A stretch of 64,000 nt of DNA, taken from positions 248,001 through 312,000 of the IMG/VR virus record IMGVR_UViG_3300034073_003340, one strand, 5' to 3'. The notes under the pieces were generated by a model. It was not told the DNA's origin. It saw only the letters and a program-made list of their open reading frames with translations, and did not search any database. Position numbers and translations under genes: made by a program. Of this stretch, positions 29,307 to 52,505 are shown piece after piece. Each line of letters begins with the position of its first letter. The stretch's first letter is position 1.

Positions 29307-29657
29307 TTACGCGGTGGGTTCCGACACTGCGACTTCGGCGCCTTCGATCACGGACGTGTCACCTTCAGCAGCTTCGCCGGTGGTCATTGCGAACCAGCCA
29401 TACTTGTCGCTGCGCAGACCGAACGTGCTGGCGTCGGCCAGTTCGCCGGCAACGCCCAGCTTTTCCAGCTGCTTGTCGGTGATCTCGATCTTGGCAGTCT
29501 TGCCGCTGGTCACGATCTCGGTCAGAACGTGCGGGCCAGCCTTGCGATCAGTCGGACGCAGCATGAGAGCGCCGTCCTTGACGTCCAGACGAAGCTTGCC
29601 GCCCGTGCGGCCCTGGATAGCAGCGGTTGCCTGAGCGTTGAAATTCAGAATTCGCAT
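29307..29657 (-). CDS. Hypothetical protein, paralog of 31466-31759
   Basis: LRPTDRK and GLRSDKYGWFA shared; strong codon bias; GGAGA RBS. Confidence 0.75.
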   Translation of the reverse strand: MRILNFNAQATAAIQGRTGGKLRLDVKDGALMLRPTDRKAGPHVLTEIVTSGKTAKIEITDKQLEKLGVAGELADASTFGLRSDKYGWFAMTTGEAAEGDTSVIEGAEVAVSEPTA

Positions 29658-29887
29658 TTCGATCTCCATATTCTTTGTTACACAACAGCAATAGCTTGTT
29701 GTCTGAATTCATATTAGCTGAATTGCCCTAAACGTCAATACCTAGGAGCAGGATTTTTCATTCTTTTTAAGCTAGTTACACCTAGATACCTCAGAAATGC
29801 TTGTATCTCGGAAGATTTTTGAATCTTCCGAGATTCAAAAGATTGAAAAATATTGCGACGATCTTGCCGGTAAGCTATAAAGAGAGC

Positions 29888-30141
29888 ATGGGGTTTAGAA
29901 ATAAATCTCAGACTAGCAGCCCCGCTAAGTGGGAACCGTCTACCGGGTTACGGGGTAGGGCATATGACACGTGCCACACGAGTGTCAGCGATTGTGGACA
30001 TTGCCAAGGTTCCACCTCGGTTGTTGAGTAGAAACGCGGAAGGATGCTGATCCCCCTAAAAATAATCAGCACGGGGAAATCCGTCGAGGTCACCGAAGCC
30101 TCAAGAGCTCAGAATCGGATTAGTCAACCGATTCTGAGCTC
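29888..30141 (+). ncRNA. Orphan structured RNA candidate
   Basis: TTGCGA-N17-TATAAA promoter, several nested stems, H-type pseudoknot, strong terminator hairpin 30105-30141. Confidence 0.55.
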
Positions 30142-30159
30142 AATTTAGTAAATATGTTT

Positions 30160-30254
30160 GACGGAGACGCCTAATTGGTATGGGCGCTCACTCACATGGG
30201 CAGGCGTATCCAGAGTGAGAGTGTAGTAGGGTTCAAATCCTTACCCCGTCACCA
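30160..30254 (+). tRNA. tRNA-like RNA with expanded anticodon arm (undetermined)
   Basis: GACGG/CCGTC-ACCA acceptor, D arm, GGTTCAAATCC T arm; 7-bp CTCACTC/GAGTGAG stem closing 19 nt. Confidence 0.6.
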
Positions 30255-31465
30255 ACTGATTTCCACAATAGCACATTCAAGCTCTGATGGGACTAGACCT
30301 TCGCGAGGAACGATCCAGATGACTCGTTCTACTCGATATAAAGATTCGTTACAAAGATCAGTGCTACGGGCAAAATAATGGCCCCTTTCAGGAATTTGTG
30401 GCAGGAAGACAACTTCATCATTCCTGCCTGCCATTCGTAAAATGATTTTGATCATTTGACTTTAACAGTAGTCCTAAGAGAGACTATATTACAGTTAGGA
30501 CCAGCTTCTCGGCGCAGCTGGATTATTCCAGTCCGTACCTGCACCCAAAGTCAACATTACTTCAGGGACAGCGACATTGGACTCCCCGGGTTCAGGTAGA
30601 TATACCGACCACGTGACGTTCTGAATGAGATAGCTTGTTCCGTTGACGAAGATATATTTTCCTTCATCAGGGACTTGTGTCATCAACATTTGCCCCATTG
30701 GGGCAAAGAGGTCTGGGTTTGGATTGCCAGCATCTAAATCCTGTCGATGTTCGTCCATGGTTCTACGTCGACGAAAGTGGACGATAATATGAGGATCAAG
30801 TGTCATGAAGCAAAATCCGGATCAATAGCTCTGGGGTTTTCAACCGATGCGTCCCAACCCATACGATAATCCGCTGATCCGTTTTCATAACGACTCAACA
30901 GTTCTAGATGACCGTCTGCTCTATAGCGGGTTCCATCCATAAGTCCAGCCTGATATTCGGCTTGATTAACAGGCTGCGCGGTTTGAGAAATTAACTGTTT
31001 CATAACGTCAAGCTAACGGTAAGGATATTTTAGTCAAGACTTTTGTCTACTATCAACTCACCTTTTCTGTTACCCTTCATAATCAACCCATAATAGCTAA
31101 CCTCAAAACGATCCCACAATTTCAGACAAAGATCGTTTGAATGATCAAATCCATTGTATTGGGACTGACGCGTCTTGATATGATCAAAAGCAATCTTAAA
31201 GAGATCGTCTTTCTTCACAAAACGGCTATCAGTGGGAGGGAAGGTAAAGCGACCTACCATTATATTGTTTCTGAAAAGAGAAACAATATGATCGGGCATT
31301 AATATCTTTTGTTTGATTCTGCCATTTCTTAAGAACATATTATCCTCCTGTTATTTTACCCGAGTTTACATATCGGGTGTTAAAAGAACGTTAACAGGTA
31401 GATTTCTGTCACAGACAGAAACGGCGGCCCCCTACAACCGCCGTTCCCGCCGAATGGCTATTCGA

Positions 31466-33000: not shown

Positions 33001-33327
33001 ATGTCAAATAGTCGCACGAGTATTTACGTTATTGGCCCCGAGGGTGGGCCTTTTAAAATTGGTTATAGCGCCTGTCCACACAGCCGGTTATCATCGCTCC
33101 AGACTGGATCAACTCAAAAGTTGATTTTACATTATAGCGAAGAAACAGACACCGAAATTGCGAGGGTGATTGAACAATTGATCCATCGCCAGATTGGACA
33201 CAAGAGAATTCGTGGAGAATGGTTTGATGTTGGTTTGGATGAAGCAATTGGAGAGGTAAGGTTCGCCTTTATCCGTTGGGAAGATGAACCTTACCTAGTT
33301 TCCAAATTCAAAAACAAGCTTCTTTAG
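33001..33327 (+). CDS. GIY-YIG-like T5orf172/MUG113 nuclease domain protein
   Basis: IYVIG..FKIGYS..RL..LQTG...E..IH...RIRGEWF. Confidence 0.85.
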   Translation: MSNSRTSIYVIGPEGGPFKIGYSACPHSRLSSLQTGSTQKLILHYSEETDTEIARVIEQLIHRQIGHKRIRGEWFDVGLDEAIGEVRFAFIRWEDEPYLVSKFKNKLL

Positions 33328-33773
33328 GAAAGAAGCGACTTCACAATGGCACTGGCCTTTGCCTTGTCCAGCGAAGTCCCAAAGGTCTTGGTCAGGCTGG
33401 CCATGATGCCACCCATTGCCTTCATGTTCTTTTCCGACAAGCTAGCAATCAAGCTTTCAGCTTCGCCACGGATCTCATCCTCACTGGCCATCTGCGGCAG
33501 CAAGGACTCGAGGATCTCGAGTTCAGCCAGCGACAGTTCGTGGTCAGGCTTGAGGCTTAGGGTGTCCTTGACCTGCTTGATAGCCTTTTGAATTGCCCGC
33601 AGGGCGTCCTCATCATTGGCCTTGACCGTCGAGAGATCAGCACCGGCCTTGACCGCGCGCTCCTTGGCATTCGCAGTAGCGGTAGCTTGGACGCTCTGGA
33701 AGCTGCCGGCAAGCGGGTCGCGGGCCTTCCGCAGTTCGAGGGTTTTTGCGTTCAATGCGGCGAGCACACTCAC
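33324..33773 (-). CDS. GatB/YqeY domain protein
   Basis: ELEILESLLPQMASEDEI, KAMGGIMASL, ASAIVKSLL. Confidence 0.85.
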   Translation of the reverse strand: MSVLAALNAKTLELRKARDPLAGSFQSVQATATANAKERAVKAGADLSTVKANDEDALRAIQKAIKQVKDTLSLKPDHELSLAELEILESLLPQMASEDEIRGEAESLIASLSEKNMKAMGGIMASLTKTFGTSLDKAKASAIVKSLLS

Positions 33774-45257: not shown

Positions 45258-45333
45258 TGGTGGCCCATATGGGACTCGAACCCACAACCGACAGATTTTA
45301 GAGATCCCTGCTCTACCATTGAGCTAAAAGGCC
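45258..45333 (-). tRNA. Amber suppressor tRNA (CUA)
   Basis: 76-nt cloverleaf; loop CT-CTA-AA; CCA encoded; one mismatch each in the acceptor and anticodon stems. Confidence 0.8.
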
Positions 45334-51649: not shown

Positions 51650-52505
51650 ATGAAAGGTTGAGAATACACCTTTTACAAAACGTCTTCGAGCATTATCCCT
51701 GGCTTCTGACCAGTTTTCTCTCGATTTCCACTAAGCGTAGCCGAAGCAGTCACTTAGTAACGTTCCAAAGCCGCCAACTTATAGACCGCTGGCATTAGCG
51801 GTGTCCTTACGGGCCTTTCGGTAGTGTCTAGTTACGCCTGGAATCGCTTCCAGTTAAGCGGCCGCTAAGCCACAACATACCCTCTTCTACCAACACTAGT
51901 AGACGTTTGCCCCTACCAGTGTCCCTGTTAGCTTGCGCCCAGGGAATTAGGCTTTTTCAGCCTCGTAAGCGAGTCAGGCTTTCATTTTTTGACAGCTATG
52001 TCTAAAACAGCTATGTTTAACCCATTGCGATGTGCTGACTCAGTAGCTTCAAAGGCTTTTGACCTCCAAAATACTACACACCACGTATCTTTCGCCTTGC
52101 GGGGCTACTTGATCAGTTTTCAAGAACTGTAACACACGGCTGAACCCGTATATTCCAATCCTATCAACTTGCCACTTGCCCTTGGCGCGACCCTCGGACT
52201 GTAGTGACTATCTCTTCCCACTTGGTACTGACCATATTTCGCTGGCGACGTTGGGGTGCGAAACCCATTATCGAGCCATCCGTTGGACCACTCGACGTAT
52301 ACCGCTTTCGCGGAACAGTCATCCTATGGCGTCCTACCTATCTCCGCAACCCGTAAAGGCCCGAAGAGCTATCTTTTGGATAGCAGGGTGAGACTTGCTT
52401 GTTATTGACCTATATTGCTATAGGCGAGACCTATTGGGTTTCAGCCCCTTTCCCTAAGTTGCCCCAGGTTATCTGCTACAAGCAGCAATCTCTAATCTCT
52501 TGAGC
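51650..52505 (-). ncRNA. Large structured ncRNA, GOLLD-like
   Basis: ~855 nt without a credible ORF, between a TTGACA-N17-TACTTT promoter and a terminator at 51620-51649; many GNRA-capped hairpins; GTGGTGTGTAGTATT..CAAAAG and GTGTATTCTCAACC segments recall GOLLD. Confidence 0.7.

What the first reader, a model, noticed from the sequence alone, without database searches (positions are those of the whole stretch)
29888..30141. Stand-alone plus-strand structured RNA with multiway junction and pseudoknot
Seen: its own promoter (TTGCGA-N17-TATAAA) and terminator, against the direction of the surrounding genes. It has a 5' GAAA hairpin, then a junction closed by GCAGCC/GGTTGT and GGAACC/GGTTCC with three inner stems (CTACC/GGTAG, TGACAC/GTGTCA, GCGAT/ATTGC). 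After that, a TGCTGAT/ATCAGCA stem has a CCCC loop that can pair with the following GGGG (H-type pseudoknot). No credible ORF. Function unknown.
Basis: seen in the sequence. Interest (0 to 1): 0.65.

Follow-up and report, generated by a model that had tools for sequence, protein, structure and literature searches.

The report
Knotted phage RNA with tRNA mimic
A giant bacteriophage carries a previously uncatalogued, independently transcribed RNA gene: a tightly knotted ~255-base RNA followed by a tRNA look-alike with no anticodon. The pair is conserved in related giant phages, and its function is still unknown.

Summary
The finding is real, but its 3' boundary is too short and some pairings are wrong. 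Window 29888-30254 (+) is a non-coding RNA gene in a 436-kb phage genome with terminal repeats. It lies in an 825-nt gap between minus-strand ORFs.

I found 10 distinct homologues, all in 277-465 kb phage records or metagenome contigs. All ten share:
- a TTGNNN-N17-TATA(A/G)N promoter;
- a GNRA-capped 5' hairpin;
- several covarying hairpins;
- at least two H-type pseudoknots;
- pairing between the 5' GACUAG and the loop of the last long hairpin.

It has a canonical acceptor, D arm and T arm. The anticodon arm is replaced by a 7-bp stem with an invariant GGGCAGGCGUA loop. An A6·C67 mismatch is invariant.

Rfam 15 and ARAGORN recognise neither module. There is no conserved ORF, and these phages have no tmRNA and no SmpB.

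Short contigs from wastewater runs, three of them labelled RNA-Seq, cover only the inside of the 5' domain. This hints at a stable transcript.

My best guess for function is inferred, not shown. A two-part precursor is cut by RNase P at the tRNA mimic, giving a stable structured RNA plus a CCA-ended tRNA decoy.

The parts
29853..29881 (+). Sigma-70-type promoter: -35 TTGCGA (29853-58), 17-nt spacer, -10 TATAAA (29876-81). Predicted start near 29888.
   Evidence: One TTGNNN-N17-TATA(A/G)N element at the equivalent position in 10/10 homologues, with varying spacer sequence. Sequence.
29890..29909 (+). P1: 5' hairpin GGGGTTTA-GAAA-TAAATCTC with a GNRA loop.
   Evidence: A hairpin occupies this position in every homologue, with GCAA, GGAA or GAAA loops in most (sequences).
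29911..29916 (+). GACTAG: 5' strand of the long-range pairing with the P9 loop (30120-30125).
   Evidence: Invariant in 10/10. Complementary to the P9 loop in 10/10. L051 extends it with a double change, GGACUAG:UUAGUCC against UUGACUAG:YUAGUCAA.
29921..29933 (+). P2: small hairpin 29921-24 / 29930-33 with a conserved RCUNA loop.
   Evidence: RNAalifold pairs 63-75, 64-74, 65-73 and 66-72, with CG to UA changes in L051 and L054.
29934..29937 (+). AACC: tentative 5' strand of the junction-closing helix. Partner GGTT 30019-22, or alternatively GGTT in the P3 loop (29946-49).
   Evidence: Equivalent NCCC/GGGN pairs abut pseudoknot A stem 2 in 7-8 of 10 sequences: AACC/GGUU, GUCCC/GGGAC, ACC/GGU, ACU/AGU, UCC/GGA, CCC/GGG. 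Ambiguous.
29940..29958 (+). P3: hairpin CTACC / GGTAG with a GGGNNAC-type loop.
   Evidence: 9 helix versions in 10 sequences. Own partner perfect in 10/10, foreign partner in 6/88.
29965..29987 (+). P4: hairpin TGACAC / GTGTCA.
   Evidence: A hairpin at the same position in all homologues with different stem sequences.
29988..30015 (+). Pseudoknot A: S1 GCGAT 29988-92 / ATTGC 30000-04; S2 GTGGA 29994-98 / TCCAC 30011-15.
   Evidence: Interleaved complementary stems in the same order in 9/10 homologues. Strands were picked by hand, so this is tentative.
30019..30022 (+). GGTT: tentative 3' strand of the junction-closing helix.
30042..30070 (+). Pseudoknot B: S1 GGAT 30042-45 / ATCC 30050-53; S2 GCTG 30046-49 / CAGC 30067-70; A-rich third loop.
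   Evidence: Both stems covary, with 8 versions each. Own partner perfect in 10/10. Foreign partner perfect in 1/84 (S1) and 9/84 (S2). S2 is also found by RNAalifold.
30071..30084 (+). P7: hairpin ACGGG-GAAA-TCCGT, a GNRA loop closed by G·U.
   Evidence: RNAalifold pairs with GC to AU and GC to CG changes. Loops are GAAA, GUAA, GCAA or GUGA.
30086..30102 (+). P8: hairpin GAGG / CCTC with a CANCGNA-type loop.
30105..30141 (+). P9: 14-bp hairpin. Its loop ATTAGTCAA (30119-27) carries TTAGTC, which pairs with 29911-16.
   Evidence: 17 RNAalifold pairs, most with compensatory changes, and an invariant TAGTC in the loop. No T-run follows, and the terminator scan finds nothing.
30142..30159 (+). 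Linker. TAAATA (30149-54) lies exactly 5 nt before the first base of the tRNA-like element.
   Evidence: TAAATA-N5-G in 7/10 homologues. The linker is 6-26 nt in 9 homologues and about 200 nt in L012.
30160..30254 (+). tRNA-like element.
- Acceptor stem: 30160-66 / 30244-50, with an A·C mismatch at 30165/30245.
- D arm: 30169-85.
- 7-bp arm: 30187-93 / 30213-19, carrying the invariant loop GGGCAGGCGTA (30198-208) in place of an anticodon arm.
- T arm: 30227-43.
- Discriminator: A30251.
- CCA: 30252-54.
   Evidence: 26 pairs, 93.8% paired against 35-58% when slid. 11 pairs have compensatory changes, with 0/500 shuffles as high. One copy per genome at 101-112 bits, against 39 bits or less for true tRNAs. 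Missed by ARAGORN and the Rfam tRNA model.

Best explanation
Window 29888-30254 (+) is one gene for a two-module non-coding RNA of a giant phage.

Shown:
- A conserved sigma-70-type promoter drives a ~255-nt 5' domain (29888-30141).
- That domain folds into a compact, pseudoknot-rich structure. It has two GNRA-capped hairpins, a junction holding P3, P4 and pseudoknot A, then pseudoknot B, then three hairpins. The loop of the last hairpin pairs back to the 5' GACUAG.
- 6-26 nt downstream (about 200 nt in one homologue) lies a tRNA-shaped element (30160-30254) with a canonical elbow and acceptor/T minihelix but no anticodon.

Inferred:
- The two modules are made as one precursor.
- Host RNase P cuts at the 5' end of the tRNA mimic, as at any pre-tRNA. 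This sets the 3' end of the 5' domain just after its protective 14-bp hairpin.
- The mimic's own 3' end is trimmed and given or kept CCA, like the phage's true tRNAs.
- The 5' domain then acts in trans as a stable structured RNA, binding a protein, the translation apparatus or copies of itself.
- The anticodon-less mimic cannot decode. It acts as the processing and stability handle, or as a decoy for a factor that reads tRNA shape and the invariant arm loop.
For: The gene is real and conserved.
- 10 distinct homologues carry both modules in the same order, all in 277-465 kb phage records or metagenome contigs.
- The promoter is conserved in 10/10.
- There is one copy per genome.

The structure is supported.
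- RNAalifold gives 34 pairs, 22 of them with compensatory changes.
- P3 and both stems of pseudoknot B are perfect with their own partner in 10/10, but in only 1-11% of foreign pairings.
- The tRNA-like cloverleaf has 11 of 26 pairs with double changes, and no shuffle out of 500 reaches that.

It is not coding. Stops occur in all frames and no peptide is conserved.

The tRNA-type ends fit.
- The window copy ends ACCA, as do 5 of the 7 tRNAs in the window.
- Relatives end A-C followed by a non-CA base, as do many tRNAs of those genomes.

Co-transcription fits.
- Three homologues have linkers of only 6-8 nt, too short for a second promoter.
- P9 lacks a U-tract.

There is a hint of expression. 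Contigs of 171-178 nt at 100% identity, from 4 wastewater runs of one study (3 labelled RNA-Seq cDNA), cover only 29900-30098. Nothing covers the flanking genes.

Known precedents exist.
- RNase P cuts a tRNA-like element to form the MALAT1 3' end (PMC8457004).
- GOLLD and ROOL lie near tRNAs and may be co-transcribed with them (PMC5737381).
Against: - No transcript ends, RNase P cleavage, CCA addition or binding partner were observed.
- The tool itself rates the RNA-labelled runs as 'probably DNA'. They come from a single study, and their contigs cover neither P9 nor the tRNA mimic.
- 7 of 10 homologues carry TAAATA exactly 5 nt before the mimic. That could be a second promoter, which would make the mimic an independent transcript.
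- In L012 the modules are about 200 nt apart, and P9 is followed by GCUUUU.
- Position 8 is A or C rather than U, and the A6·C67 mismatch is invariant. Either could alter recognition by tRNA enzymes.
- The invariant GGGCAGGCGUA loop points to a specific role for the mimic that a mere processing handle would not need.
Confidence: 0.4

Rival explanations
1. The tRNA mimic is the effector and the 5' domain serves it. The CCA-ended, possibly aminoacylated, anticodon-less tRNA look-alike titrates or misleads a host factor that reads tRNA shape. Candidates are a defence nuclease, a nucleotidyltransferase toxin, a synthetase, EF-Tu or the ribosome. The 5' domain would be a leader or chaperone, or would stay attached.
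For: - The mimic is the most conserved part: 83% mean column identity against 60% for the 5' domain.
- It carries an invariant 11-nt loop and an invariant A6·C67 mismatch.
- Its ends resemble those of the co-resident tRNAs.
- A possible promoter of its own is present in 7/10 homologues.
- These phages invest heavily in tRNAs, with 25-58 per genome.
Against: - Without an anticodon loop it cannot decoy anticodon nucleases.
- The 5' domain is far too elaborate and covarying to be a plain leader.
- No partner was identified.
- No complement to the loop exists elsewhere in the phage genome.
Confidence: 0.2
2. The 5' domain is a self-assembling RNA in the manner of GOLLD, ROOL and OLE. The GACUAG:CUAGUC pairing and the GNRA loops would act between copies, building a multimer. 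The tRNA mimic would be a tethered or co-packaged partner.
For: - Both partners of the 5'/P9-loop pairing contain the self-complementary CUAG. Covariation cannot tell intramolecular from intermolecular pairing.
- Two conserved GNRA loops are present.
- The same phage carries GOLLD at 51655-52084.
- In ROOL, a pairing first read as tertiary from covariation proved to be a quaternary kissing loop. GOLLD linkers sometimes hold tRNAs (bioRxiv 10.1101/2024.12.08.627333).
Against: - There is no structural or biochemical data.
- At ~255 nt it is much smaller than GOLLD or ROOL.
- It has no similarity to either family by Rfam models.
Confidence: 0.12
3. It is an unusual tmRNA or another ribosome-rescue RNA. 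The tRNA-like domain plus a string of pseudoknots would enter stalled ribosomes.
For: - The overall parts list, a tRNA-like domain plus several H-type pseudoknots, recalls tmRNA.
- The mimic gives a weak hit to the ends of the tmRNA model (12.7 bits).
Against: - There is no conserved reading frame or tag in any frame.
- There is no G3·U70 pair; pair 3-70 is C-G, A-U or U-A.
- The tRNA-like domain is contiguous and closed, not formed from the 5' and 3' ends.
- No match passes the tmRNA cut-off, and SmpB is absent from all five genomes.
- ARAGORN calls no tmRNA.
Confidence: 0.03
4. The 5' domain is a ribozyme, either self-cleaving or acting on the adjacent tRNA mimic, or a cis-acting riboswitch or leader.
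For: - It has high structural complexity and conserved unpaired nucleotides in loops.
- It always lies next to a tRNA-shaped substrate.
Against: - No ribozyme, RNase P or riboswitch model matches even at E up to 5-10.
- No plus-strand gene lies downstream to regulate; the flanking ORFs are on the minus strand.
- There is no biochemical data.
Confidence: 0.07

Closest known systems
MALAT1 / mascRNA (and NEAT1 / menRNA) in vertebrates
   Same: A long structured non-coding RNA is followed directly by a tRNA-like element without a working anticodon. RNase P cutting at that element makes the 3' end of the upstream RNA, which ends in a protective structure (PMC8457004). The mimic gives weak, sub-threshold hits to Rfam mascRNA-menRNA (about 20 bits in L050 and L054).
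   Different: The setting is a bacteriophage rather than the vertebrate nucleus. There is no sequence homology. The upstream RNA is a 255-nt pseudoknotted fold, not a kilobase transcript ending in a triple helix. Processing is not shown here.
GOLLD and ROOL RNAs
   Same: They are large, pseudoknotted, phage-borne RNAs of unknown function that sit near tRNAs and may be co-transcribed with them (PMC5737381). GOLLD is present in this same window.
   Different: There is no match to either model. This RNA is a third to a half of their size. It is tied to one dedicated anticodon-less tRNA mimic rather than to ordinary tRNA islands. Multimerisation is untested.
tmRNA
   Same: It combines a tRNA-like domain with several H-type pseudoknots.
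   Different: Here there is no tag reading frame, no G3·U70, and a contiguous tRNA-like domain with its arm closed by a loop. SmpB is absent, and scores are below threshold.
Bacterial Y RNAs (YrlA) and plant-virus 3' tRNA-like structures with upstream pseudoknot domains
   Same: These are RNAs that mimic the tRNA elbow and acceptor without decoding. In plant viruses a tRNA-like 3' end is preceded by pseudoknots. Pseudoknot B of L054 gives a weak hit to TMV_UPD-PK3 (21.8 bits, E 0.12). What I state about YrlA comes from my own knowledge and was not tested.
   Different: In YrlA it is the acceptor end that is closed and the anticodon side that opens into the Ro-binding stem, the opposite of the arrangement here. 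No Ro gene lies nearby. Plant-virus elements are the 3' ends of RNA genomes. No Rfam family of these kinds passes threshold.
Canonical tRNA
   Same: It has a 7-bp acceptor stem, a 4-bp D stem with a GG-containing D loop, a 5-bp T stem with a GGTTCRAATCC loop, a discriminator base and an (A)C(CA) 3' end.
   Different: It has no anticodon stem-loop, A or C at position 8, an invariant A6·C67 mismatch and a 6-7-nt variable region. ARAGORN and the Rfam tRNA model do not call it.

Membership tests
Any Rfam 15 family | Match to a curated covariance model at or near its gathering score | tested here: not met
   No match at the gathering score in the window or in 6 homologous loci. At E up to 5-10 there are only scattered weak hits that are not shared across homologues.
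Canonical tRNA | Cloverleaf with acceptor, D and T arms and a conserved elbow | tested here: met
   Acceptor, D and T helices covary, and the GG and TTCRA loops are invariant.
Canonical tRNA | 5-bp anticodon stem with a 7-nt loop carrying U33 and an anticodon | tested here: not met
   It is replaced by a 7-bp stem, a 3-4-nt bulge, 2-3 further pairs and an 8-10-nt loop containing the invariant GGGCAGGCGUA. ARAGORN and RF00005 do not call it.
tmRNA | Tag reading frame with a resume codon and stop | tested here: not met
   No conserved frame or peptide in 10 homologues.
tmRNA | G3·U70 alanine identity pair, and a tRNA-like domain formed by the 5' and 3' ends | tested here: not met
   Pair 3-70 is C-G, A-U or U-A. 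The tRNA-like domain is contiguous at the 3' end.
tmRNA | Model score over the cut-off, and a cognate SmpB in the genome | tested here: not met
   Best RF00023 score at the locus is 12.7 bits against a cut-off of 47. SmpB (TIGR00086) is absent from G000-G004. The host's SmpB could not be tested.
GOLLD / ROOL | Match to the family model | tested here: not met
   GOLLD matches only 51655-52084. Nothing matches at 29888-30254.
GOLLD / ROOL | RNA-only multimeric assembly | not testable with these tools
   Needs native gels or cryo-EM.
lncRNA with a tRNA-like 3' processing module (MALAT1 / mascRNA type) | tRNA-like element directly downstream on the same strand, with a canonical RNase P-recognised acceptor/T minihelix and elbow | tested here: met
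   Seen in 10/10 homologues. The linker is 6-26 nt in 9 of them.
lncRNA with a tRNA-like 3' processing module (MALAT1 / mascRNA type) | RNase P cleavage at the mimic's 5' end and CCA addition to the released mimic | not testable with these tools
   Only contigs were available, and they do not reach the junction.
   The scan lists no terminator there. The tail is AAUUUAGUAAA. The hairpin loop is invariant and pairs with the 5' end.

The most novel reading that the evidence does not exclude
This is a new class of phage RNA machine. A small, multiply knotted RNA, either alone or assembled into multimers through its GACUAG:CUAGUC and GNRA contacts, would work together with a dedicated CCA-ended, anticodon-less tRNA mimic. 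Together they would capture or reprogramme part of the host's tRNA or translation apparatus, or a tRNA-directed defence. It would be an ORF-less functional cousin of tmRNA, or a miniature GOLLD/ROOL with a built-in tRNA cargo.
Probability: 0.15. Interest if true: 0.88.

Novelty: new variant of a known kind. Interest (0 to 1): 0.68.

Why it matters
Giant phages carry many translation-related genes, and a few enigmatic large RNAs such as GOLLD and ROOL always sit near tRNAs. Nobody knows what those RNAs do.

This locus offers a smaller, sharply defined case. A ~255-nt RNA is physically coupled to one dedicated tRNA mimic, with a clear promoter, strong covariation and a handful of invariant features: the arm loop, the A·C mismatch and the loop-to-5' pairing. 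That makes the link between ornate phage RNAs and tRNA biology directly testable by RNase P cleavage, CCA addition, charging, pull-downs and cryo-EM.

It also adds a family to catalogues that currently miss it, and it shows that tRNA finders overlook anticodon-less tRNA mimics in phages.

Tried and rejected
- **Known RNA family.** Rfam at gathering and E-value thresholds, on the window and on homologues, gave nothing.
- **tRNA or tmRNA by ARAGORN.** Not called.
- **tmRNA.** No tag frame, no G3·U70, no SmpB.
- **Protein-coding.** ORFs 29801-30031 (+) and 29908-30093 (-) are not conserved, and stops occur in every frame in the homologues.
- **Cis-regulatory leader.** No plus-strand gene lies downstream.
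- **Kissing between the mimic's arm loop and the P3 loop.** There are 8 complementary bases in L005 and 6 in L017, but RNAduplex finds no consistent partner across the 10 sequences. Dropped.
- **Alternative pairing of the arm loop AGGCGU with ACGCCU at positions 8-13 of the mimic.** L050 changes the D stem to GCAC/GUGC and keeps the loop, so the D stem is supported and the alternative is not.
- **Antisense targets of the arm loop in the phage.** The motif occurs once, and its complement nowhere, in 436 kb.
- **Cultured relatives.** None by DNA. A neighbouring protein gives only distant hits.
- **Bacterial genomes.** The strict pattern finds none. The looser pattern finds only ordinary tRNAs and chance sites.
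- **Functional clues from neighbours.** PHROGs and NCBIfam give nothing beyond a very weak AbrB/MazE-like signal for the conserved 120-aa neighbour.
- **TAG recoding.** A crude open-frame count gave no clear signal.
- **Pattern scans for the 5' domain alone.** They returned only known members plus chance coding-region hits.

Full report
**Setting.** The window is bases 248001-312000 of a 435,856-bp virus record with direct terminal repeats. Nearly all of its genes lie on the minus strand, and it has no close cultured relative. Rfam finds a GOLLD RNA at 51655-52084 (-). Rfam lists six tRNAs and ARAGORN seven, all on the minus strand, including one with a CTA anticodon. The finding lies in an 825-nt gap between minus-strand ORFs 29307-29669 and 30495-30806.

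**Checking the observation.** The quoted motifs are all in the sequence. The plus strand folds better than shuffles (z = -3.6, 0/200 as good), and the minus strand less so (z = -2.5). No Rfam family matches the region at gathering score, or at E up to 10. The consensus promoter/terminator scan lists nothing here. Its rule needs a T at the end of the -10 hexamer, and no T-run follows the last hairpin.

Reading beyond the stated end, 30160-30254 folds as a cloverleaf with a GGTTCAAATCC T loop and a 3' ACCA. ARAGORN and the Rfam tRNA model do not call it.

**Relatives.** A neighbouring 120-aa protein led to two related phage records. DNA search of these showed that the tRNA-like part and the 3' part of the RNA are conserved. 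Pattern scans of IMG/VR and the metagenome collection then gave 10 distinct homologues in all:
- the window itself;
- L005 (277 kb), L006 (417 kb), L012 (462 kb) and L017 (465 kb);
- metagenome contigs L046, L049, L050, L051 and L054.

Every one carries both modules in the same order and orientation. None was found in 185,579 bacterial and archaeal species genomes: the strict pattern gave zero hits, and the looser pattern gave ordinary tRNAs or chance sites. Other pattern hits were chance matches inside coding regions. Gene order around the locus, a set of small hypothetical genes, is also conserved.

**Promoter.** All 10 homologues have exactly one TTGNNN-17 nt-TATA(A/G)N element. It ends 25-59 nt before the invariant GACTAG, and the spacer sequences differ. 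Transcription should start near 29888, one or two bases before hairpin P1.

**Structure of the 5' domain.** On a MAFFT alignment, RNAalifold recovers 34 pairs, 22 with compensatory changes: P2, stem 2 of pseudoknot B, P7, P8 and the long P9. MAFFT misaligns the variable centre. I therefore located helices by hand in each sequence, verified their complementarity and order by script, and compared each 5' strand with the 3' strands of other sequences as a control.

| Helix | Own partner perfect | Foreign partner perfect |
|---|---|---|
| P3 | 10/10 | 6/88 |
| Pseudoknot B stem 1 | 10/10 | 1/84 |
| Pseudoknot B stem 2 | 10/10 | 9/84 |

These hand-picked strands carry some selection bias, but their positions are collinear in all sequences.

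The architecture in window coordinates is:
- **P1:** 29890-29909, GNRA loop.
- **GACUAG:** 29911-16.
- **P2:** 29921-24 / 29930-33.
- **Junction:** probably closed by AACC 29934-37 with GGUU 30019-22. It encloses three elements:
  - P3 (29940-44 / 29954-58);
  - P4 (29965-70 / 29982-87);
  - pseudoknot A (S1 29988-92 / 30000-04; S2 29994-98 / 30011-15).
- **Variable segment:** other homologues have one or two more hairpins here.
- **Pseudoknot B:** S1 30042-45 / 30050-53; S2 30046-49 / 30067-70.
- **P7:** 30071-84, GNRA loop.
- **P8:** 30086-30102.
- **P9:** 30105-30141.

The invariant TAGTC in the P9 loop pairs with the 5' GACUAG in 10/10 sequences. Most of that pairing is simply conserved. 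The one informative change is L051, where GGACUAG faces UUAGUCC instead of UUGACUAG facing YUAGUCAA.

Two points stay open:
- The NCCC after P2 could pair with the GGG in the P3 loop instead of the distal GGGN.

**The tRNA-like element.** On an alignment of the 10 copies (83% mean identity), I tested a cloverleaf with acceptor, D arm, a long arm and T arm.
- 93.8% of cells are paired, against 35-58% when the partners are slid.
- 11 of 26 pairs have double changes, and 0/500 shuffles reach that.
- Pairs 2-71, 3-70 and 4-69 each have two or three versions.
- Pair 6-67 is A·C in all ten.
- The D stem changes from GCCU/GGGC to GCAC/GUGC in L050.
- The arm that replaces the anticodon arm is a 7-bp covarying stem bearing the invariant GGGCAGGCGUA.
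- Position 8 is A or C, not U.

A covariance model of this element finds exactly one copy per genome in five phage genomes (101-112 bits). Their 25-58 true tRNAs score 39 bits or less.

The 3' end behaves like that of the resident tRNAs. The window copy ends ACCA, as do 5 of the 7 tRNAs in the window. Relatives end A-C followed by a non-CA base, a pattern common among the tRNAs of those genomes.

**Not coding, not tmRNA.** All three forward frames contain stops, and no peptide is conserved. No tmRNA model hit passes the cut-off, and SmpB is absent from all five genomes. There is no G3·U70 pair.

**Expression.** The region's DNA is held fully by subsurface and soil metagenome runs of one study, which is probably the source. 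Four wastewater runs of another study, three labelled 'METAGENOMIC RNA-Seq cDNA', hold only about 14% of the sampled words. Laid on the window, each gives one contig of 171-178 nt at 100% identity covering 29900-30075 or 29930-30098. Nothing covers the flanking genes, P9 or the tRNA mimic.

Genomic DNA of this phage would also cover the flanks, so these look like fragments of an abundant transcript of the 5' domain. The tool, however, rates the runs as probably DNA, and they represent a single study. I count this as a hint only.

**How it most likely works.**
- *Shown:* a conserved promoter, a conserved and covarying multi-pseudoknot fold, an obligatory downstream tRNA-shaped element with tRNA-like ends, one copy per genome, and restriction to giant phages.
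- *Inferred:* co-transcription. Three homologues have linkers of only 6-8 nt, and P9 has no U-tract.
- *Inferred:* RNase P cleavage at 30159/30160. This would leave the 5' domain ending just after its 14-bp hairpin and release a ~95-nt mimic that is CCA-tailed.
- *Analogy:* this is the logic of MALAT1/mascRNA (PMC8457004). It also fits the long-noted association of GOLLD and ROOL with tRNAs (PMC5737381; bioRxiv 10.1101/2024.12.08.627333).

What the mature RNAs do is unknown. The invariant arm loop and the A·C mismatch argue that the mimic is more than a handle. The TAAATA exactly 5 nt before it in 7/10 homologues leaves room for a promoter of its own. I put 0.4 on the processing model, 0.2 on the mimic being the main effector, 0.12 on a self-assembling RNA, 0.07 on a ribozyme or leader and 0.03 on a tmRNA-like role.

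**Comparison and novelty.** The locus fails the membership tests for every Rfam family, for canonical tRNA (no anticodon arm), for tmRNA and for GOLLD/ROOL. It works most like a structured RNA with a tRNA-like 3' module, and it belongs with the ornate phage RNAs that travel with tRNAs. As a family it is uncatalogued in Rfam 15, and I found no description in the searched literature. I rate it a new variant of a known kind. A more radical reading remains open at about 0.15.

Noticed in passing
window 51655-52084 (-): GOLLD RNA (Rfam RF02032, 164 bits, E 3e-44) in the same phage, about 21 kb from the finding. The Rfam model covers only part of a full GOLLD.
   Followed up: partly
window 45258-45333 (-): tRNA with a CTA anticodon, an amber suppressor that ARAGORN labels Pyl. 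Relatives G003 and G004 have one too. TAG is the rarest stop among long open frames (7 of 62), but a crude open-frame count gave no clear sign of recoding.
   Followed up: partly
L010 32-72(-), L011 789-829(-), L016 12183-12223(+), L018 218-258(+): A second, unrelated-looking ~85-nt tRNA-like family in small low-GC phage contigs. It has an acceptor stem, a T arm and a 6-bp arm whose 18-nt loop also contains GGGCAGGCGU. It stands alone just after a terminator. ARAGORN and Rfam do not call it, and cultured phages have no match. Because the search pattern required this motif, the recurrence may be selection bias.
   Followed up: partly
L013 2088-2137(+); L014 902-961(+); L015 4436-4495(+): Further odd tRNA-like elements in other large phage contigs. 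They have an acceptor stem and T arm but non-standard middles, and they contain GGCAGGCGU. The L014/L015 copy is a ~60-nt minihelix-type element ending CCACCA.
   Followed up: no
G000-G004 whole records: These phages carry 25-58 tRNA genes each. In G002-G004 more than half lack an encoded CCA and end with the discriminator plus C.
   Followed up: partly
window 29307-29669 (-): A conserved 120-aa neighbour (58-68% identical in relatives) with a very weak AbrB/MazE-like N-terminal signal (NCBIfam E 0.03). Paralogues occur on the other side of the RNA in L005 and L006.
   Followed up: partly
window 30249-30455 (-) and 30495-30806 (-): These two ORFs together correspond to the N- and C-terminal halves of a single ~107-112-aa gene in L005 and L006 that ends right after the tRNA mimic. 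In the window, the stop codon of the downstream ORF overlaps the mimic's 3' acceptor strand.
   Followed up: no
window 33324-33773 (-): A 149-aa protein matching a PHROG annotated as tRNA amidotransferase (GatB/YqeY-like, E 2e-17), about 3 kb from the RNA.
   Followed up: no
L012 9493-9690: In one homologue about 200 nt are inserted between the 5' domain and the tRNA mimic, and P9 is followed by GCUUUU. The two modules may be separate transcripts there.
   Followed up: no
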